The notes under the pieces were generated by a model. That model made no database searches. It saw only the letters and a list, made by a program, of their open reading frames with translations, and was not told the origin of the DNA. Source: Podarcis erhardii (lineage: Eukaryota). From it: a DNA stretch of 64,000 nt. Positions within the stretch are counted from its first letter, which is position 1; the number at the start of each line of letters is the position of its first letter. Shown here piece after piece: positions 1 through 41,936 of this stretch. The position numbers were made by a program, and so were the translations under genes. Location: the NCBI GenBank assembly GCA_964252035.1, contig OZ176205.1; one strand, written 5' to 3'.

Positions 1-1718
1 TTACTTAACTATGGAGCTGTAGCTCTTTTCAAACAGCATGTCTTAATATGGCCTTGGCATCTGCTGTGCTTGTTAGTTTTTAAACTAGCATGCATTTATT
101 CCTGGTCTAATGTATCTCTGTGTGTAGCAAGGTTGTACCTACTGAAAAACAGGGGGGTTGTGATAAATAAATTCTCATTGATTGATATTCAGTTCATTTA
201 TTTCTGTTGTCTTCTAATAAGGGTCTCAGCCTGGGGAGAAGAATTTTGTCCTAGATCAGCCCTAGACACATAAGCACGTTCTTTCCAGGAGTTTCCTGTG
301 TTGCCAGTCCAGTGCCTTAGCACAAGAGAAGTAGGAAATAAAAGTACTGACAAAAATATGAATTGTGGAGTTGGGGATTTATGTGTTTTTATCACTCCTT
401 CCATTGTGTCGGATACATAGCCACAATGCCCCACATCTACCATATGCAAAGATTCATATGGTACCATCAGAACATCTCAGACAAGAAAGGAAAGATGAGT
501 CTGATCTTTGAGAATATTCCAGGTTTTTACATCAAATAATGTAACTAAAAATTGAACATGTGCTGGTCACACTTCAAAGGGTTGGTTGCCTAATTATGCA
601 AAGTGCTCATTGATTTCACTGGATGTCTGCTTACCATTTCTAAGAATGAAACGGGTGTTTGCTTTAATGTGGAGTTACAGTCCTGTCATTCAGTTCATTT
701 GGCACCAAAATGGAACATTCCATCCTGGAGTTTTCTATCAGGCCACATGTCCCTTTGGCATAAGGACTTTTTGATCCATTTACCAGTGGCACTGCCCGCA
801 GTGATGACTAAAAATAAACAAACACATAAAAATTAGATGTAAAACCCCACTCTTGGAAGAATGAGCCTTTCTATAAAAGATTTGTAACCCTTTGAATTTA
901 ATGGCCCAAATGACTCAGAAGAGGCATCTAGTATGATTTATGCTCTAGACAATATATTGCCTATTCCCAAATGTGTATTCGGTATTGTTGGCAGCTGACA
1001 TCTGTATTCTGGCTCCATGAATTGTTTCAGTTGCTCAATCTGATTAAAACTTATTTTATTCAAATATGTATCATTGGATAAAGAGTTGTCACCCATATAT
1101 GGGTGTAATACTTTACTAATAATGAGATCTTAGAGAAATTATAACTCTGGTGCTATGGGTTTTACATGCTGTGTAATGAGAAGTTTGATTAGACATAGGC
1201 ACAAGAAAGTATGCCCTCCAATCTGTTGGTTCATATCAAAATTGCTCTCATCTTTGATTTGGATGTGAATTAGGACTAGCTTGCATAACTGAGATGGGTT
1301 AGGGTGGGGTTGGGGAGTTGGTCCCTCTCTGGGTACTCTGTTCAGCAGCAGCATAGAGTTGAGGGTTGAGGGGGGCAGTTTCCAATCTACAGGAATTCTA
1401 TTTCCCCAGACTTCTGTCCATTTTTTGAGTGCTAGTTTGGAGTATTTGTAACTTTTATTGTACATCAGAATTCCTGCCTAAGCTGGTATAGGTGGTTTTT
1501 GATTTGGTGTTGAGGACTCTCAAGGTCATTGCTCAGTTTGTGTCTCTGTGTGTGAGAATCTTAACATTCATGTTGAGCTCACCATATCCAGGGTGGCTTA
1601 GGGCTCCTAAACCACCAAGGCAACCATGGGGTTATCCCAACATATCATTTGCTTGACTCCATGGCATGACTGAGGTCATTCAGGGATTTAAGAGTGTTAG
1701 GTCACCACTATGTGACCT

Positions 1719-2140
1719 AATGTATGGAAGTGAGAGCTGGACCATAAAGAAGGCTGATCGCCGAAGAATTGATGCTTTTGAATTATGGTGCTGGAGGAGA
1801 CTCTTGAGAGTCCCATGGACTGCAAGAAGATCAAACCTATCCATTCTTAAGGAAATCAGTCCTGAGTGTTCACTGGAAGGACAGATCCTGAAGCTGAGGC
1901 TCCAATACTTTGGCCACCTCATGAGAAGAGAAGACTCTGGAAAAGACCCTGATGTTGGGAAAGATTGAGGGCACAAAGAGAAGGGGACGACAGAGAACAA
2001 GATGGTTGTACAGTATTCTCGAAGCTACCAACATGAGTTTGACCAAGCTGCGAGAGGCAGTGGAAGACAGGAGTGCCTGGCGTGCTCTGGTCCATGGGGT
2101 CACGAAGAGTCGGACACGACTAAACGACTAAACAACAACA
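1719..2140 (+). mobile_element. BovB (RTE) LINE, 5'-truncated 3' end
   Basis: ORF 1666..1968 contains MYGSESWTIKKADRRRIDAFELWCWRRLLRVPWTARRSNLSIL, the BovB ORF C-terminus. It ends with the BovB tail GGGGTCACGAAGAGTCGGACACGACTAAACGACTAAACAACAACA. Confidence 0.93.
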
Positions 2141-16520: not shown

Positions 16521-18506
16521 ATGGAACTGGAATAGGTGGTTTAGTGATCCAAGTAGGTGCAAGGCATTTTTATGCATGTAGACAGAATATTGCACTGTTG
16601 CATTTTGAAGTAGGATCTCTGGAATTTTCAAGAAAGCTGAAGAGAGGTATGAGTCAATAGAATATCAGTCCCATGACTGAAACTGGGACATAAGTGTATC
16701 TGGTCTCAAGAAAGGTGTGTTGAGAATATGGGAAGGTGAACCACTCCTGCCTTTCTTTACATAAAAACCCTTTTTTTGTGCTACAATTTTAATTACCAGA
16801 ATGACCTGGGAGAAACACTTGCTTGAGTCAGAAACCCAAAGCATAAAGTGTGAGGCAACTAAGAGCTAAAAGCTTGTTCTGCTACAGGGATCATAGCAGG
16901 TCAAAAGCTAAACAAGGTGGAATGTGCTATGCTTCACTGAAGTTTTCGTTTGGTGAAATTCTAAGTTTATGTTCTGGCAAGTGCAACTTACAGCTTCTGT
17001 TCTTGTCAAGCGCTTTTGGCCTGAGAGCATTTTAAGGCCAACTGAAAATTTTAACAGATTTTTCTATCTCTGAGTGTCTTAACTTTCTTATCTCAGTGGT
17101 GGGGAACCTCCTCTACATGGGTCTTATTAGGCCAACCAGACCTCCCTGTTTGGCCTGTGAGCGGGGAGCAGGTAAAGATGTGGTTGGGCCTAATAGGGTG
17201 TTGTACCTGCAAAATTTCATGCACTGCTCTTGGCAAACCTCACAATCATTGAGGCTTCAAAGCACCCTGAACAACTCTATACAAGTCTTGATGATCAGCT
17301 GATTGCCAAGACTTCAAAGCATCAAACATGTCATACTGGTGCCTACGTGTTTTAATTTCAAACTGCATGGCTGAGTGAAAACAGATCACCTGATGTGGTG
17401 TCACCCTCCTGCCAAACTTGTCCTGCAGGGGGCAGGAGACATAAGGATCTGGCCTGACTGGATCCACTTCCCAACCCTGATCTATCTGCTTCGGAAAGTT
17501 CAGTGTAGCTTCACTTTTATAGGCTCCCCAACAGCCCTGCTGTTTGTGTTCCAACTTGTGCTGAAGATTCTGTTGGAAGAGGGTGATCTAGTTATGAGAG
17601 AAGTGTAATTCTTTAGCTTTTCAACTGAGGCTACCAGCAAGATGCCGCCTACTGCCCAATGTTATAATTCTAGGAACATGTCTGAAACATTTCATTACAA
17701 CATTGCACATTCTCAACCATAACTCTCTTCTAAATGTATCTGAATTCCCGTGTTGACTTGATATCCGTGGAACACGGCTACTAATTTAGATGCGGGTGAT
17801 TCCATTACTTGGGAATATAAATATGCAACCATTCCAGGCAGGGTAAATGTATGCAAAGCCAGTGGAGTTTGTGTGGATAAAGAGACCAGCATACAGATGG
17901 GATATTGGTTCAGGTGCAAAAGTGTCTTGTTTTTAAGGTTAGGACTGCAGGTTAGGGCTTAAAGTGGTCCTTAAAGACCCATTCGTTTAGAAGCAACTCT
18001 TCTTAGGAGATTATCATGTTGCTTGTTTGCTTTGGTGCTGAAATAGTTCTTAGCTATTTTTATTTATTTGAAAGTTGATCTCTGGACTCTATGGTACTTG
18101 CATCAATGCTGCTGTTTTCATTAGTATTCTTAGTGCCCCTTATGGTGTGTTAGGATTAGATTCAAACAAACATACAATGTTGGAAGGCTCTTTGTGAGGA
18201 TTTGGCCTTAAAGGCAGCCTAAAAAATATCATAAATAAGTGAGCACTATTCCCCATTTCTGTAGCAAGTATGTGTATTGAAAAACAGAACTGAGCAGGAG
18301 CAACAGCCAAGCATTCAAACATTTATTGCAAAGGGCATTTAAAACCTCCTATCATTTGGCTAAGAGACCTTTAGAGCTTACCAAGCCAAATGCAATCCAC
18401 CAGTCATGTTTTGTGGGCTGCAAGCACCAGGCATGCAGTAAAGCCACAGGGCTGTGCTTCAGTGGCCTGGTGGATTAAAGGTGGGCAGTCTTTTTTTTTT
18501 TTTTTT

Positions 18507-18682
18507 AAGAATGGCAAACTGCCACATGCAGCGCCTTACTTGGATGTGTCTGGAGTCTTGGAAGCTTGACTACCCTACGTTCTCCTACAAATGGACCTTG
18601 AGCTTGTTTGGAGGTTCTAGCAGGGGAGCGCAGCTATCGTATACCCTTGACCGAAGAACGGTACACTCCTTCTATCTGGGAT
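18507..18682 (-). pseudogene. RN7SK: 7SK snRNA retrocopy (3' ~176 nt visible, polyadenylated)
   Basis: The reverse complement reads ...TTCGGTCAAGGGTATACGATAGCTGCGCTCCCCTGCTAGAACCTCCAAACAAGCTCAAGGTCCATTTGTAGGAGAACGTAGGGTAGTCAAGCTTCCAAGACTCCAGACACATCCAAGTAAGGCGCTGCATGTGGCAGTTTGCCATTCTT + A16, which I recognise as the vertebrate 7SK 3' half. The 5' part runs into the gap. Confidence 0.92.
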
Positions 18683-18852
18683 NNNNNNNNNNNNNNNNNN
18701 NNNNNNNNNNNNNNNNNNNNNNNNNNNNNNNNNNNNNNNNNNNNNNNNNNNNNNNNNNNNNNNNNNNNNNNNNNNNNNNNNNNNNNNNNNNNNNNNNNNN
18801 NNNNNNNNNNNNNNNNNNNNNNNNNNNNNNNNNNNNNNNNNNNNNNNNNNNN
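18683..18852. other. Assembly gap (170 N)
   Basis: Run of N. Confidence 0.99.
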
Positions 18853-20343
18853 TTTAAGATATTAACAGATGCGAAAGAAAGAGGGGGCTTTGCCCTGCCA
18901 GACTTAAAGTTGTACTATGAAGCCGCAGCTTTTTGCTGGCTAAAAGACTGGCTACTTCTCGAAGACACTGACGTGCTGGACTTGGAAGGTTTTAACAATG
19001 CTTTTGGTTGGCATGCATACTTATGGTATGATAAAGTTAAGATCAATAAGGCCTTTAAGAACCATATTGTCAGGAAAGCAGTGCTTAATGTCTGGACAAA
19101 ATATAAAGACTTACTGGAAAATAAAACTCCAAGGTGGCTCTCACCTCTGGAGGCTAAGGCCCTAAAAAGACCCAATATGGAGGCCAAATGGCCAAAATAT
19201 TGGGAAATATTAGAAAAAGATGGAGACAATTGGAAATTGCAGAGTTTGGAGAAAATGAAGGATAAGGTGCGAGACTGGTTACATTATGCTCAGATTAAAG
19301 AAGTTTTTAAAAATGATAAAAAGTTAGGGTTCCAGGTGGAGAAATCGAAGTTAGAAACTGAATTGTTAGAACCAAAGACTAAGGTACTATCTAGAATGTA
19401 TAACTTGCTGTTAAAATGGAATACACAAGACGAAATGGTTAAATCGGTTATGATAAAATGGGCACAGGACATTGGGCATAACATTATGTTTGAGGACTGG
19501 GAAAGGTTGTGGACCACTGGGCTGAACTTCACCGCATGTAATGCTCTGAAGGAAAATGTTATGAAAATGATATATAGATGGTACATGACCCCAGTTAAAC
19601 TTGCTAAAATATACCATTCGTCTGATAATAAATGTTGGAAATGTAAAGAAAATGAAGGAACATTCTTTCACCTCTGGTGGACATGCCCTAAGGTGAAGGT
19701 CTTCTGGGAAATGATATATAATGAACTGAAAAAGGTATTTAAGTATACCTTCACAAAGAAACCAGAGGCCTTCCTCCTGGGTATTGTCGGCCAGAAGGTG
19801 TTAAAGAAGGATCGAACATTTTTCATGTATGCAACAACGGCAGCAAGGATTCTTATCGCAAAAAACTGGAAAACTCAAGATCTACCCACACTGGAAGAGT
19901 GGCAGATGCAGCTGATGGACTATATGCAACTGGCCGAGATGACCGGCAGAATCCGTGATCTGGGAGAAGAGAAGATGGAGGAAGACTGGGAGAAATTCAA
20001 AATGTATTTACAAAAACATTGTAATTTGGTTGAATCTTAAGAAGGATGCTGGATTATAAAAAACTGCTCACCACTAAATTAGATTTAAATTTGATGATAA
20101 GTGAGACTAAAGAAAATATAAAAAATTTTTTGGAAGAAGTGCTAGATTATATTTGAATGAATGGACATGAGATTGAAAACAAGTTGATAATTTGTGTGGA
20201 AAAACTTTTAACGATGTAAATGGGAGCGGGAGACGTGAGGGAGTCCAAAGAAGTGATGAAATTGTTATGACAGAAATAAGATTGTTTATTATGTGTGCAT
20301 TTATATTTAAAAACCTTAATAAATATTTATAAAAAAAAAAAAA
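18853..20343 (+). mobile_element. L1-clade LINE 3' portion: ORF2 C-terminus (18853-20040), 3'UTR, AATAAA, poly(A)
   Basis: 395 uninterrupted codons beginning FKILTDAKERGGFALPDLKLYYEAA and containing the CCHC knuckle CWKCKENEGTFFHLWWTC. AATAAA near 20318 and an A-tail at 20331-20343. Confidence 0.92.
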
Positions 20344-23325
20344 TAAAGGTGGGCAGTCTTGCCTTTCTGGTGGTCATTTTATGACTGGATGGAGGCCTGC
20401 AGGCAGCCCTTGGCCTCTGCAAGTGATCAGTTTAGATCTCCGGTGAGAGCATCTGTGGTCTGTCTCAGGGCAGGCGGAGATAGAGAGGTGGGGCAGGGCT
20501 GAAAGACCGTACAAGTTTGATATGTGCATGCAGGAACTGAGTTGGGAGAAGTAGACAACGCTGCTACTTTAGTAGGGAGACATAGGCATCTTATGGGTGT
20601 GTTTAGAGACAGCAACTCTGCGAACATGAACATGAAGATTGTGTGTTGGATTTGCAGTAGATGCACCTTTACTTCCTTTCCAAACAAACATGCTACGTGC
20701 CTCAAAAATCACTCCCCCCCCCTTTGAACTTCACAATCTAGACAGAGGTGACTTTGCTTACAAAGAACCCCAGTTTACCTTATTGTGATGCTCCATGGGC
20801 CTTTATTCTGAATTTGGTCCCCATTCCCCCCCCCCAGGCTCTCCATTAAATAAATGGCTATGCCACCATGATTCTGTTTTATGGTCCCAGAACTTGAACA
20901 TGCCTTAGACTGTGTATATTCCAACACTAAGTGTGTGCTATGATGGTTCTTTTTTCCTTTCCCATAAGGGAAACTGAACTTGTAGGTGTCAAGAGCTGGG
21001 GCATTCTTGGCTTGCTTAGGAGCCCTGTTGATTTGCATTCCCTGTATTAGAGTTTACTAGGCACAGTGGTCTGTAGAGATCGTGCTACCTTTGCATGCAC
21101 ACTGGGCCCTAATCTATTTATTTACTTATTTAGATATTTATATCAGGGTGGTGTAATAAATTAGGAATAAATTAGGAAAACATTAAAAGCAGTTGATACA
21201 AATGGACCTTTTGGGTTTCCTTTTCCTTGTTTGTTTACATAACACAGAAGTGATGGATCAAAATTACATGAGTGCCGTTTAAAAATAGTTTCCTAGGAGT
21301 GATGTAGGAACTACTGCAGAAGTGGTGGCTACCATGTGGCTCCACAGCATCTGTAGAGGGTATCTTGGTGTAGATTATTACATCTTCTGAAGGTAGCATC
21401 AAGAAAGTGGGAGGCAGTAATTCTTAGTTCAAGGGCAAGCAGTAGTCAGTGTGCCTTTTTGGTGGAGGAGAGATGTGGGGAGATACGATTTGCAGTTGGA
21501 GTAGGATATGAATGACCCAGTGGTTTGACTTAACATGCTTACTATTAATATTATTATTAATTACCCACCCTTCACCATAAGTCCAGGGTGGAACACAACA
21601 ATTTAAAATACAAAATATATGTTTGGCCATAATATTACTAGTCCAACAAACTGTGGTCTTTTGGTGCATGAATGAGCACCAAATTTCAGGGTTCCCCATT
21701 TCCCTCCTTTGTCTCTGCTCCTCTCTCACACACATCTTCAGAAAATACTTCCTCATTTGTTAAATCAGAGTTTTCCCCTTGACATCTGTACCAGTTTCCT
21801 TAAGTGCACTCCACAAACCAGCACCAGCTGACTTAAGTGCACTTTACAAACCACATTTGTAAACCACAATCTGAAACTGTACAATCCCATGGGGTTCAGG
21901 GAGAGTGTGAGGAAATCTTTTAATGGGGTCTGCCCTAATACCATGAAGCAGCAAGAATCAGGAAAACTTCAGGGACTATTTATTTGTGAACAACAGAGCA
22001 ACAACTCAGTATGGCAGCTGGGACTTGCTACACAGGACAGCTTATGGTTCCCACTGAGCTGTGGAGGAAGCCAGAGCGCGGTGTTTCTTAAAGAGACAGG
22101 CCACACACACTACAGAAACTTGCTTGCGCTTGTTGCTTGTTCCTTCTCTAACAATCCATAGTTTGTTGCACCAAGAACATAAAGCAAACCAAATAATCCG
22201 AGATACCTTAAAAACGAACAGACTTATTTTGGCATAAGCCTTCATGGACCAGTGCATGCTTGATTTAGATACATGAAGTGTTGTCTGCATGGACGTGTGT
22301 TTATGCATTTGACAAAATGAGCCCTAGGTCATGAAACTTTATCCTGCAATGAATTTGTTAACAAGATCAGATTGTAAGTTATCTCTTGGTAAAGGAGACC
22401 AACCAAATAATATATAAGTGTTGGTGATTGCCCTAGTTATTTCCCTATATTGCTGTCATTTCTTACCAGTTTATAAGATTGTGGGCCAGGAGTGCCATTA
22501 CAAACATGCTTCATGGAACAGAAGTTCCTGGTAAGAACACTGCATCTTACTTGTCTGTAAGGCCATTTTGGAACACTCAGAATGGGTATAAATTTATACG
22601 TGGAAGGTTTCCTATGCAAGCCCCATTAAAATTAATGTATTTGTATTTTTCATGGGTCCTCTCTCCTTCTTTGGGGCTCTCTCAGAATTCATTTATAGTG
22701 AATGGAACCCTGTGCTGCGTATGACATGATCACTTTCCTTCAACCTTATCGGGGCTTATAAAGAGTGCCTTGATAAAAACAACTTAAAAGAAGAAGGGAA
22801 AAGGAGAGCCGTGCATGGAGAATGAGACTGAACTAATTCTTGTTTGAAGACAATGCTATTCATAAAAATGAGAGACAGTTGAGCTTTCATAATCGAAAAA
22901 GAGAGTTGTCTTCTAATTTTATTTTCATACACTGAATTAGCACTATGCCCAATTGACAGTGTTTGTAGTGTGCCTGCCAATTAAGTTTCTATGTTCGTCC
23001 AGCTATACAGATTTCTATATCAACATGAATTGTATTTCCAAGTGTGATCTCATGAGACACCGTAAACAGATACTCTGCAGGAAGTCCACAAAAGAATATC
23101 TTCCCTGACGCTCATTCTGCAATTTGGTAACAAAGGGAAGGAGTATGTCAAACATAATTTGCTTGTTTGCTTGCCAAGGGCTGTGCACTCCTTGCATGTG
23201 CGTCTTGGATTTTTACCTAGCAATTTGTTTCCACTCACTCTCTGATATGTAGTCTGGCACTGAAGTTACTGGAGTCGACTCCGGTTGGTAACCGAGATGA
23301 CTGTTCTGCCCCACTCATTCAAACA

Positions 23326-23463
23326 NNNNNNNNNNNNNNNNNNNNNNNNNNNNNNNNNNNNNNNNNNNNNNNNNNNNNNNNNNNNNNNNNNNNNNNNNNN
23401 NNNNNNNNNNNNNNNNNNNNNNNNNNNNNNNNNNNNNNNNNNNNNNNNNNNNNNNNNNNNNNN
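23326..23463. other. Assembly gap (138 N)
   Basis: Run of N. Confidence 0.99.

Positions 23464-28327: not shown

Positions 28328-28378
<51 letters not shown>
28328..28378. repeat. (GT)n(AT)n compound microsatellite at the left end of the Penelope insertion
   Basis: Read directly. A matching (AT)n run lies at 29695-29717. Confidence 0.95.
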
Positions 28379-28379
<1 letters not shown>

Positions 28380-28427
28380 GCAGGTTTTGGTGTCCTCGGG
28401 TGTCTTCCCGTGTAAAAGTTGGGGTGT

Positions 28428-28472
28428 CTAGGCGACGTTTCGACGAGGTCTCACTCGTCATCTTCAGGCTGG
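28428..28472 (-). ncRNA. Minimal hammerhead ribozyme motif (antisense copy in PLE left arm)
   Basis: Exact reverse complement of the motif at 29572-29616. Confidence 0.6.
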
Positions 28473-29571
28473 TGCTTTCGGCTTCTTGTTACTGGAACAG
28501 AGCAGGATCTCAGTGTTTGAGTTCCTATAAATACTGTAGAGGGGGTGTGGTGTATAGCCTCCAATGTTCTGGGCAGAGAGGAAGTTCCCAGGCTAGTGTG
28601 CCTTTTCTTCTTTTGTTCCTTAATTACTTGAGAGATATCTTGAGTGATTTCTTGAGTGATATCCTGAGTACCACTTAGGTGGGTCATTAGGTGTGGATTA
28701 GTTGTTAAAGTCTTTGTGTCTTGACCTCTTGAACTTTGTGAAGAGTTTTCCTGAGAAGATGGCTGTACTGTACTTAGTTGTGCTCTGGCTTGGCTTCGTG
28801 TATAGGGGCGAGCTGTGGTTTTGTGGCTTGTGTCAGCCAGATCTGTGTAGGGATTGCAGGGGGGTGCAGCATCCGGAGGTGCCACCATGGATTGGCTACT
28901 GGATGGTGTCTGTAATTCATCTGTGGAGAGGGTCTGGGAATAATCATGGAAGCCATCGAGATAGAGAAACACCCTCACAACATGAACAAGCGTGACGACA
29001 CATCCCGCTTGCCAGACATCTGGAAATTAGCCCTCCCCACAAAAACTGACACCAGATCCAGAGGCACACAGAACGCCAACACCAATCAACCACACCAGAC
29101 CCAAACCCAGACCCTCTCCACAGATGAATTACAGACACCATCCAGTAGCCAATCCATGGTGGCACCTCCGGATGCTGCACCCCCCTGCAATCCCTACACA
29201 GATCTGGCTGACACAAGCCACAAAACCACAGCTCGCCCCTATACACGAAGCCAAGCCAGAGCACAACTAAGTACAGTACAGCCATCTTCTCAGGAAAACT
29301 CTTCACAAAGTTCAAGAGGTCAAGACACAAAGACTTTAACAACTAATCCACACCTAATGACCCACCTAAGTGGTACTCAGGATATCACTCAAGAAATCAC
29401 TCAAGATATCTCTCAAGTAATTAAGGAACAAAAGAAGAAAAGGCACACTAGCCTGGGAACTTCCTCTCTGCCCAGAACATTGGAGGCTATACACCACACC
29501 CCCTCTACAGTATTTATAGGAACTCAAACACTGAGATCCTGCTCTGTTCCAGTAACAAGAAGCCGAAAGCA

Positions 29572-29616
29572 CCAGCCTGAAGATGACGAGTGAGACCTCG
29601 TCGAAACGTCGCCTAG
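29572..29616 (+). ncRNA. Minimal type I hammerhead ribozyme motif
   Basis: CUGAAGA(U), stem II GACGAG/UGAGAC/CUCGUC, GAAA-C-G-UC. Predicted cleavage after 29610. Stem I has only ~2 immediate base pairs. Confidence 0.65.
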
Positions 29617-30879
29617 ACACCCCAACTTTTACACGGGAAGACACCCGAGGACACCAAAACCTGCATTCCTGTACCCGTGAAAATCTACGAAAGCATATAT
29701 ATATATATATATATATAGGCTGTTTGCACAATTTAAATCAGTTGCGCAGGCATTATATGAGTTTTGCTTTGCATTTTCCTGTTTGGCTCCACTGATCAAG
29801 GCCTTTGCTACTCTTAGCCACCTCCACAATCTGTACTTTACTGTTGACATTTGTGTAATTTAAGAAATTTAAAAGGGCAGCTTTCCTCCTGGCATTGCTT
29901 TCCCGAATTGTGTCCAATAGCTGCTGAAGAGCATCTGAGCATCTGTTAGCTTGTGTTGTTGTTTTTCTCCATCAACAGATTGGGCCTGATGGATAGGTGC
30001 TCACCACCCTCCTTTCCCTCCTCCCCTTCCATTTCTTTTATAGCCCTAAGAAGCTGTCATTTACGTTGAAGCAGGATTGTTAAATAGCCCCCACCCCATT
30101 CCTGATTGATGGAGGCTTGAAATATACCATGTTAACAATGGAGGAGAAGCAGAAAAAGGAGAGATTGACTCACTCATTGCCATGAAAAGTGGCAGATTGG
30201 CTTTTTCAAAGATGACTCTCTAACTTCGCCTCCACCCCACCCCCCTCCATCTCCTCATTCTTCGTCTTCTGTCTCCCCAACTCCCTCTGCTCTCAAATGT
30301 TAAATTATTACACAGGGGGAAATAATCTATTACACTTGGTCTATAGAGGCTCTCACGTACCAGTGGCTGGCTATCGTACTGGCATTAATCAGTTAAGAGA
30401 CGCCAAAGAGCAAAAATGAGATGCTTGCCCACAGGCGCTCTCATTGTTTACCAGTCAGCCATAAATATTGACTCATAAATATGCAGGCCTCCTCTTAAGT
30501 GAAAAAGTGAAATGACAGGTTCAGGAGACGAGGGGATTTGCGAGCGGGACAGAGTCGAGATTGTGCAGCCTTTTAGGCACCAACTAGATGTGAGGGTGGA
30601 AGGATGTGATTTGAAGTTAATTATGGGCAGACAGGGGAAGGAAGCTGACATCCCTCTCCCCACTGTGCAAGAAATTAAAAATAGTATCAGGGATGCAGGG
30701 AAGCCTGGGCAAAGGGAGGGTATGGCGTCTTCTTCCCTCTGACTCATATTACATATTAAATTGCCACTTCATCCTGTGCAAGGAATGAATTGCATGGAAG
30801 CTTCTTTCTTCTTTCTCCTCTTTTCTTTAACAAAAAGAAAAATGACCGGAAAATCTGGTTTTCGTTGGGAGGACACCTT

Positions 30880-31565
30880 TCCTTTTTTTACATATAATTT
30901 TTTATTAATTTTCCAACACAATTGTACAATTTTATCCAAATTTTAACAAATTATTCCTTTTGAACTTCCTTCAGCTTCTCTGGTAATCGTCCGTAATTAC
31001 TCTTCAATACGCATTCCCTTCATTGTAGTGCCATTTGTCTTCCCTCCCCTTTCTATTTCTTTTTAACAATACATCTTAAACTTTTACAGTGCTTCTTGAA
31101 ACCCCACTAGCATTGTTTGCACATCACATACATTTTTCAGATAATCTACAAACTTTCCCCAATCTTCGATGAACTTTTGGTTTCGAATATAGCTTATTTT
31201 CCCAGTCAGTTTATCCAGTTCCGCATAGTCCGTCAATTTCATTCTCCATTCTTGTATCGTCGGTATTTCCTCTTGTTTCCATTTCTGGGCCAATAAAATT
31301 CTTGCTGCTGTAACTGCATACTGGAAAAGTTTACAGTCTTTTCTTCTTATTTCTTTTCCTGTAATCCCTAACAGAAAAATTCCTGGTTTCTTAACAAAGG
31401 TATATTTTAACATCTTTTTCAATTCATTATATATCGCTTCCCAGAAACTCTTCACTTTCTTACATTCCCACCACATATGATAAAATGTTCCCTCTTTTTC
31501 TTTACATTTCCAACACTTATTACATGTTTTGTACATTTTTGCAAGTTTTACCGGTGTAATGTACC
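30880..31565 (-). mobile_element. L1-clade LINE 3' fragment (different subfamily from 18853-20343)
   Basis: ORF 31084..31536 contains the CCHC knuckle CWKCKEKEGTFYHMWWEC. The 3'UTR with AATAAA/A-rich tail lies at ~30880-30905. No TSD found. Confidence 0.88.
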
Positions 31566-41807: not shown

Positions 41808-41936
41808 GACAAACAGGATGATGACGATGATGACGAAGAAGAAGGGGAAGGGGAGGGGGAACAGGAAGAGGAGAAGGAACCAGAGAACCTGGGCAAGCTG
41901 CAGTTCTCCCTAGACTATGACTTCCAGGCTAACCAG
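41808..41936 (+). CDS. SYT2: Synaptotagmin-2 coding exon 3 (acidic linker, start of C2A)
   Basis: [43 protein letters not shown]. Acceptor CTTCCAG ends at 41807 (alternative CAG ends at 41816). Donor CAG/GTAAGG, 129 nt. Confidence 0.96.

What the first reader, a model, noticed from the sequence alone, without database searches (positions are those of the whole stretch)
18476..20360. Double-tailed 7SK/L1 chimeric retro-insertion: antisense polyadenylated 7SK fused head-to-head with an L1 3' end inside one TSD
Seen: TSD(15-17 bp), T16, antisense 7SK 3' half, 170 N, 1.5 kb sense L1 3' end, A13, TSD. The missing 5' part of a ~330-nt 7SK (~155 nt) fits the gap. Established: known snRNA/L1 chimeras (e.g. 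U6/L1) have the small RNA in sense at the 5' end without an internal poly(A), and twin-priming inversions use a second site on the same L1 RNA. Inference: here both target-site nicks seem to have primed reverse transcription on two different RNAs, the bottom strand on the L1 poly(A) and the top strand (ending ...GTCTT) on an oligo-adenylated 7SK. The two cDNAs then joined head-to-head. This would be two-template twin priming, which I do not recall being described in reptiles or for 7SK.
Basis: partly seen in the sequence, partly recalled or inferred. Interest (0 to 1): 0.8.

Follow-up and report, generated by a model that had tools for sequence, protein, structure and literature searches.

The report
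Lizard 7SK/L1 back-to-back retro-insertion
A young L1 fragment and a backwards-facing, A-tailed copy of 7SK RNA sit inside one perfect 17-base target duplication in a lacertid lizard genome. This is most likely one insertion event in which both cut DNA ends primed copying of different RNAs, a mechanism already described in mammals, and the actual joint is hidden in an assembly gap.

Summary

- **Target duplication:** a perfect 17-nt direct repeat lies at 18476-18492 and 20344-20360.
- **7SK part:** T16 is followed by antisense 7SK (Rfam 135 bits). The 7SK match runs to the gap edge at model position 155 of 331.
- **Gap:** 170 N.
- **L1 part:** a sense L1 ORF2 tail of 396 open codons matches human ORF2p residues 860-1224. 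It is followed by a 3'UTR with AATAAA, then A13.
- **Host:** a lacertid lizard; the best protein hits are from Podarcis.

The 7SK/L1 joint itself lies in the gap. So "fused head-to-head" is an inference, not something seen.

The best reading (about 0.6) is one L1-driven event. The bottom-strand nick (TTTA/AT) primed on the L1 poly(A). The top-strand end (...GTCTT) primed on an A-tailed 7SK.

The novelty claim fails. Twin priming on a second RNA was proposed for inverted snRNA/L1 chimeras in 2015. It was seen experimentally in 2024. It was catalogued in 2026, including 7SK/L1 chimeras and antisense Alu/L1 chimeras with poly(T).

This scan has already noted two other inverted 7SK/LINE chimeras elsewhere in the same genome, one of them followed up. 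I file this as a new member of a known kind, of modest interest.

The parts
18476..18492 (.). Left copy of the 17-nt target-site duplication. Its last two T are shared with the T run, so the duplication is 15-17 nt.
   Evidence: perfect direct repeat, only two copies in the window
18493..18506 (-). A tail of the antisense 7SK copy, read as T on the + strand. It is 14 T unambiguously, or 16 counting the two shared with the target duplication.
18507..18682 (-). Antisense 7SK RNA retrocopy covering Rfam model positions 155-331. It includes the natural 3' end and runs into the gap.
   Evidence: 135.4 bits, model 172-331; 18639-18682 aligns to model 155-195
18683..18852 (.). Assembly gap of 170 N (length is an estimate). 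It hides the 5' remainder of the 7SK copy, the 5' end of the L1 piece and their joint. It was not filled or looked up.
18853..20040 (+). L1 ORF2 C-terminal part: 395 codons plus the TAA stop, with no internal stop. It includes the Cys/His motif.
20041..20330 (+). L1 3' untranslated region with AATAAA at 20318-20323
20331..20343 (+). L1 poly(A) tail, A13
20344..20360 (.). Right copy of the 17-nt target-site duplication

Best explanation
This is one L1-mediated retrotransposition event at the site ...GGAT|TAAAGGTGGGCAGTCTT|GCC....

1. The L1 endonuclease nicked the bottom strand at 5'-TTTA/AT, within one base of TTT/AA. That end primed reverse transcription on the poly(A) of an L1 RNA, giving the sense L1 3' end plus A13 next to the right copy of the target duplication.
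2. After the top strand was cut 17 nt away, its 3' end (...GTCTT) annealed to the A tail of a second RNA, a 7SK RNA carrying an oligo(A) tail. It primed a second cDNA, giving T14-16 plus antisense 7SK next to the left copy.
3. The two cDNAs were then joined head-to-head by end joining. If the gap estimate is right, the joint lies at or near the 7SK 5' end.

Shown: the two tails, the two orientations, the identities of both RNAs, the perfect target duplication and the nick-site sequences.

Inferred: that a single event made both, that the junction is direct, and where the A tail came from. The tail could come from post-transcriptional adenylation of 7SK. It could also come from priming on a poly(A) followed by a template switch to the 7SK 3' end.
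For: - Each copy of the perfect 17-nt repeat abuts a homopolymer tail, T16 on the inside left and A13 on the inside right.
- The 7SK copy is antisense, reaches the natural 3' end and is followed by the tail.
- L1 identity: the reading frame is open, and a pure tail follows the AATAAA signal.
- The flanks are single-copy in the window.
- The bottom-strand nick site TTTA/AT is L1-endonuclease-like, and the top-strand end ...CTT can pair with an A tail (read).
- The missing 154 positions of 7SK fit the 170-N estimate.
- The mechanism is documented elsewhere: inverted snRNA/L1 chimeras (PMC4476161), experimental two-RNA opposite-orientation insertions (PMC11702581), and 7SK/L1 chimeras plus poly(T)-bearing antisense Alu/L1 chimeras (PMC13174262).
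- 7SK is post-transcriptionally adenylated in human cells (PMC12811392).
- This scan noted two more inverted 7SK/LINE chimeras in the same genome. I did not check them.
Against: - The joint is not visible, because both elements run into the gap, whose length is only an estimate.
- No empty site in a relative could be fetched.
- The described snRNA examples are 3'-truncated and tailless, unlike this copy.
- A 14-16 nt tail is longer than the mono-adenylation documented for 7SK.
Confidence: 0.6

Rival explanations
1. Two separate insertions. One element inserted first with the 17-nt duplication. The other then inserted exactly at the inner edge of one duplication copy. Its own duplication is therefore a third copy, or part, of the same repeat, hidden in the gap.
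For: The gap hides the place where a third repeat copy would lie. The inner edge ...TCTT/ is T-rich, so it is a possible endonuclease site.
Against: The second nick would have to fall within 1-2 bases of an existing junction, and in the right orientation. With plausible copy numbers the expected count per genome is well below one (my estimate, not computed from the genome). Both tails are pure and both outer repeats are perfect, so both parts look equally young. Scan notes report further 7SK/LINE inverted chimeras in this genome, which points to a mechanism rather than a coincidence.
Confidence: 0.12
2. Retrocopy of a pre-existing composite RNA. A transcript that already held an antisense A-tailed 7SK retrocopy upstream of, or inside, an L1 3' part was polyadenylated at the L1 signal and copied in one pass. 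Its 5' end was then joined inside the U/T run through microhomology with the ...CTT end.
For: The 5' junction lies in a T run adjoining ...CTT, so microhomology-guided 5' joining is possible. The gap length is only an estimate.
Against: It needs a source locus that already has the same head-to-head layout, so it only moves the problem. The 5' end would have to fall just inside a 16-nt run. An L1 interrupted in ORF2 would have to be mobilised in trans. The other 7SK/LINE locus that was followed up is described with a 58-61 nt 7SK piece in a 769-nt feature, which implies a different joint (unchecked).
Confidence: 0.07
3. Assembly artefact. The scaffold joins two contigs across the gap that are not one molecule, for example two alleles or a collapsed repeat. 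Alternatively, the gap is much longer than stated and hides unrelated sequence.
For: The junction is unsequenced. The same window holds a 561-nt inverted repeat that is 100% complementary, which may be a fold-back artefact, and a second gap.
Against: The two contig ends carry the same 17-nt repeat at the outer edge of each tail, and unique flanks. Two alleles with independent insertions at the same pair of staggered nicks are very unlikely. Gap sizes of 170 and 138 are not placeholders, which suggests spanning evidence (inference).
Confidence: 0.08

Closest known systems
Inverted snRNA/L1 chimeras made by twin priming on a second RNA (U5, U1, U2 and one U6; Doucet et al. 2015, PMC4476161)
   Same: A small nuclear RNA copy lies in the opposite orientation to a 5'-truncated L1, inside one target duplication. 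The endonuclease site makes sense only from the L1 side. The top-strand end primes on the small RNA.
   Different: Those snRNA pieces are 3'-truncated and tailless, because priming was internal through microhomology. Here the 7SK copy keeps its natural 3' end and carries a 14-16 nt A tail. The host is a lizard, not a mammal.
Antisense Alu/LINE-1 chimeras with a poly(T) tail, and 7SK/LINE-1 chimeras, in the primate catalogue (Cell Genomics 2026, PMC13174262)
   Same: The layout is double-tailed: target duplication, poly(T), antisense retrocopy, sense L1, poly(A), target duplication. 7SK is listed there as a chimera partner, and twin priming is the proposed mechanism for antisense partners.
   Different: The A-tailed partner there is Alu, a dedicated L1 parasite with an encoded A tail. 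The orientation and tail state of the few 7SK cases could not be checked, because the supplement is not held. Those are mammalian L1s.
Classical twin priming, L1 5' inversion (Ostertag and Kazazian 2001, as described in PMC2912911 and PMC12016303)
   Same: Both nicked ends prime reverse transcription, and the two cDNAs are joined in opposite orientation within one target duplication.
   Different: Classically the second primer anneals inside the same L1 RNA, so there is no second tail and no foreign RNA.
U6/L1 sense chimeras made by template switching or RNA ligation
   Same: A small Pol III RNA is joined to a 5'-truncated L1 inside one target duplication.
   Different: Those are in the same orientation, with no tail on the small RNA and a single cDNA. 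That does not fit this locus.

Membership tests
L1-mediated target-primed retro-insertion | Target-site duplication of about 7-20 bp flanking the insert | tested here: met
   Perfect 17-nt repeat, only two copies in the window
L1-mediated target-primed retro-insertion | Poly(A) tail at the 3' end, next to the duplication | tested here: met
   A13 at 20331-20343 after AATAAA. The mirror-image T16 lies at 18491-18506.
L1-mediated target-primed retro-insertion | T-rich/A endonuclease nick site (TTTT/AA type) on the primed strand | tested here: met
   The bottom strand reads 5'-CCTTTA/ATCC, that is TTTA/AT, or TTT/AA if shifted by one base (read). This is one deviation from the consensus.
L1 clade ORF2 | Homology to L1 ORF2p, including the C-terminal Cys/His motif | tested here: met
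   phmmer match to human ORF2p residues 860-1224, E 2e-14, with the C..C..H..C motif aligned. Podarcis reverse-transcriptase proteins are 76-94% identical. Pfam itself gave no hit for this tail.
7SK RNA (Rfam RF00100) retrocopy | Score above the family gathering threshold, with structure | tested here: met
   135.4 bits against 35, model positions 172-331. The match extends to position 155 at the gap edge.
7SK RNA (Rfam RF00100) retrocopy | Whether the copy is full length or 5'-truncated | not testable with these tools
   Model positions 1-154 would lie in the gap.
Two-template twin-priming chimera (inverted small RNA/L1) | Two retrocopies in opposite orientation inside a single target duplication | tested here: met
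Two-template twin-priming chimera (inverted small RNA/L1) | Direct cDNA-to-cDNA joint with no intervening target sequence or second duplication | not testable with these tools
   The joint lies in the gap at 18683-18852.
Two-template twin-priming chimera (inverted small RNA/L1) | Complementarity between the top-strand 3' end and the start point on the second RNA | tested here: met
   The top-strand end ...GTCTT has two terminal T shared with the T run.
Tailless, 3'-truncated inverted snRNA/L1 chimeras (Doucet 2015 subtype) | The small RNA is 3'-truncated and has no A tail | tested here: not met
   The 7SK copy reaches model position 331 and carries a 14-16 nt tail. It fits the poly(T)-bearing antisense subtype instead.
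Insertion (as opposed to an ancestral arrangement) | Empty site in relatives or other individuals | not testable with these tools
Look-ups of flank ORFs found nothing.

The most novel reading that the evidence does not exclude
7SK may be a recurrent, preferred second template for L1 twin priming in lacertid lizards. The scan has noted three inverted 7SK/LINE chimeras in roughly 3% of this genome. That would extrapolate to on the order of a hundred genome-wide. The copy here would show that oligo-adenylated 7SK, a decay or maturation intermediate, is captured by ORF2p at the second nick. It would also imply a physical association between 7SK particles and L1 particles outside mammals.
Probability: 0.3. 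Interest if true: 0.45.

Novelty: new member of a known kind. Interest (0 to 1): 0.3.

Why it matters
If the joint proves direct, this locus is a clean non-mammalian example of the second nicked end at an L1 target capturing an independent A-tailed cellular RNA. That supports the generality of twin priming across amniote L1s. It also supports the idea that any A-tailed RNA near the L1 particle can be copied there. Together with the other 7SK/LINE chimeras noted in this genome, it suggests a genome-wide census that could rank which cellular RNAs sit near lizard L1 particles. It does not reveal a new mechanism.

Tried and rejected
- **Reads.** So there is no read support, no empty-allele test and no test across the gap. 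All later work used 18534 and below, 18639-18682, and 18853 and above.
- **Flank ORF look-ups.** I looked up three flank ORFs in public assemblies to fetch an orthologous locus. None is on record.
- **Host gene route.** I considered reaching a relative's locus through the host gene. Only a 43-residue synaptotagmin exon is available by reference, which is too short for the length-limited protein search, so I dropped it.
- **Pfam.** It gave no hit on the ORF2 tail. The PDB sequence search identified the fragment as L1 ORF2p instead.
- **Supplement.** The supplement of the chimera catalogue is not held, so the orientation and tails of the mammalian 7SK/L1 cases are unknown to me.
- **Rejected: U6-type template switching or RNA ligation.** These give the wrong orientation and would leave no second tail.
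- **Rejected: classical same-RNA twin priming.** The inverted part is not L1.
- **Rejected: a 7SK-derived SINE.** The copy matches the 7SK model nearly perfectly to its natural 3' end.
- **Rejected: a protein-coding reading across the gap.** That ORF is an artefact of N being read as X.
Full report
**What is there**

- The 17-mer TAAAGGTGGGCAGTCTT occurs at 18476-18492 and again at 20344-20360. It has no mismatch and no other copy in the 64-kb window.
- Directly inside the left copy lies a run of 16 T (18491-18506). Its first two T overlap the repeat.
- Directly inside the right copy lies a run of 13 A (20331-20343).
- These are the only T run and one of only two A runs of 13 or more in the window.
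- A 15-17 nt identity sitting exactly at the outer edge of two opposed homopolymer tails cannot reasonably be chance.
- The 1 kb of flank on each side is single-copy in the window.

**The left element**

Rfam places 7SK RNA (RF00100) on the minus strand at 18507-18662. The score is 135.4 bits against a gathering score of 35, covering model positions 172-331, so the natural 3' end is included. It is the only Rfam family above threshold in the whole window.

The 44 bases between that hit and the gap (18639-18682) align to model positions 155-195. The 7SK copy therefore runs into the gap at position 155, and 154 model positions are unaccounted for. On the RNA strand the copy ends ...CAUUCUU and is followed by 14-16 A.

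**The right element**

From the first base after the gap, 18853-20040 is an open frame of 396 codons ending in TAA.
- It aligns to human L1 ORF2p residues 860-1224 of 1275 (E 2e-14), with the C-terminal Cys/His motif in register.
- Its best relatives are reverse-transcriptase fragments annotated in Podarcis muralis and P. lilfordi, at 76-94% identity. The genome is therefore a lacertid lizard.
- A 290-nt 3'UTR follows, with AATAAA at 20318-20323 just upstream of the A13 tail.
- The open frame, the pure tails and the perfect duplication all point to a young insertion.

The two edges cannot be continuous in the ordinary sense. The left edge is antisense 7SK at model position 155. The right edge is sense L1 at about ORF2 residue 860. 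At least one joint must lie inside the 170 N.

I tried to lay contigs of the same species and of three relatives over 17900-20900.

Look-ups of three flank ORFs, meant to fetch an orthologous locus, found nothing. The evidence that both gap edges belong to one locus is therefore the target duplication itself, not reads.

**Most likely mechanism**

The reconstructed target is ...GGAT|TAAAGGTGGGCAGTCTT|GCC....
- On the bottom strand the nick that puts A13 next to the right repeat copy is 5'-CCTTTA/ATCC. That is TTTA/AT, a one-step variant of the L1 endonuclease site.
- On the top strand the left fragment ends ...GTCTT-3', whose terminal T can pair with an A tail.

The simplest account is a single event. 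The bottom-strand end primed on the L1 poly(A). The top-strand end primed on an A-tailed 7SK RNA. The two cDNAs were then joined head-to-head.

The source of the 7SK tail is inferred.
- 7SK is post-transcriptionally adenylated in human cells, mostly by a single A (PMC12811392).
- Oligo(A) tails mark small RNAs for decay (same paper).
- Alternatively, the top-strand end primed on a poly(A) and the enzyme then switched to the 7SK 3' end. Kojima suggested this for the few A-tailed non-coding RNA retrocopies (PMC2912911).

**Rivals**

- **(a) Two nested insertions.** The second would have hit the inner edge of the first duplication. This predicts a third copy, or part, of the repeat inside the gap. 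It needs a nick within a base or two of an existing junction, which I judge unlikely but cannot exclude.
- **(b) A retrocopy of a pre-formed composite transcript, 5'-joined in the T run.** This only relocates the question to a source locus. It also needs trans-mobilisation.
- **(c) A scaffolding artefact.** The shared repeat at both contig ends argues against it. The window does hold a suspicious 561-nt perfect inverted repeat and a second gap.

I put the single event at about 0.6 and the rivals together at about 0.3. The rest is unassigned.

**Comparison with what is known**

That premise is out of date.
- Doucet et al. 2015 described inverted U5, U1, U2 and U6/L1 chimeras. [quoted passage not shown]
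- Mendez-Dorantes et al. recovered insertions made of two different RNAs in opposite orientation in cultured cells. They attributed them to joining of two ends extended from different templates (PMC11702581).
- The 2026 catalogue lists 7SK among new LINE-1 chimera partners. It assigns antisense partners to twin priming. It reports 452 Alu/LINE-1 chimeras, of which 16.8% are antisense and carry a poly(T) tail (PMC13174262; preprint).

This locus differs from the snRNA cases because the 7SK copy is 3'-complete and tailed. In layout it matches the antisense Alu cases. Among the four papers that hold both 'twin priming' and 'Anolis', I read only the U6 study, which covers lizard U6 chimeras in sense orientation. 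I saw no reptile example of a two-RNA inverted chimera. That library is not complete.

**Earlier notes of this scan (unchecked by me)**

The same genome already has two other notes of inverted 7SK/LINE chimeras inside one duplication. One was followed up and judged a clean example of a known event. There is also a note of a tailless 84-nt 7SK retrocopy. Three such chimeras in about 3% of the genome hint that 7SK is a recurrent partner in this lizard. That is the most interesting reading still open, and it needs a census.

**Verdict**

This is a new member of a known kind, of modest interest.

Noticed in passing
window 28378-29666: Perfect inverted repeat: arms 28378-28938 and 29106-29666, 561 nt, 100% complementary, with a 167-nt spacer. 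It carries mirrored ORFs and a (CA)n-like stretch. It is either a very recent inverted duplication or a fold-back assembly artefact.
   Followed up: partly
window 41808-41936 (+): Exon-like stretch encoding an acidic linker and the start of a synaptotagmin C2A domain (PDB 1rsy_A, E 4e-6). The 7SK/L1 insertion lies about 21.5 kb upstream, probably in an intron or upstream region of a synaptotagmin-1/2-like gene.
   Followed up: partly
window 31084-31536 (-): A second L1 ORF2 C-terminal fragment (150 aa ORF with the same Cys/His motif) from a different L1 family. It is 77% identical at nucleotide level over 186 nt to the L1 studied here.
   Followed up: partly
window 1666-1968 (+): An ORF resembling the C-terminal part of an RTE/BovB-type LINE reverse transcriptase, judged by eye from the translation.
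   Followed up: no
window 17073-17192 (-): Weak SCARNA11-like match, 30.3 bits, below the gathering score of 37. It lies 1.3 kb left of the insertion and is probably chance.
   Followed up: no
window 23326-23463: A second assembly gap (138 N). The unequal gap sizes suggest estimated lengths rather than placeholders.
   Followed up: no
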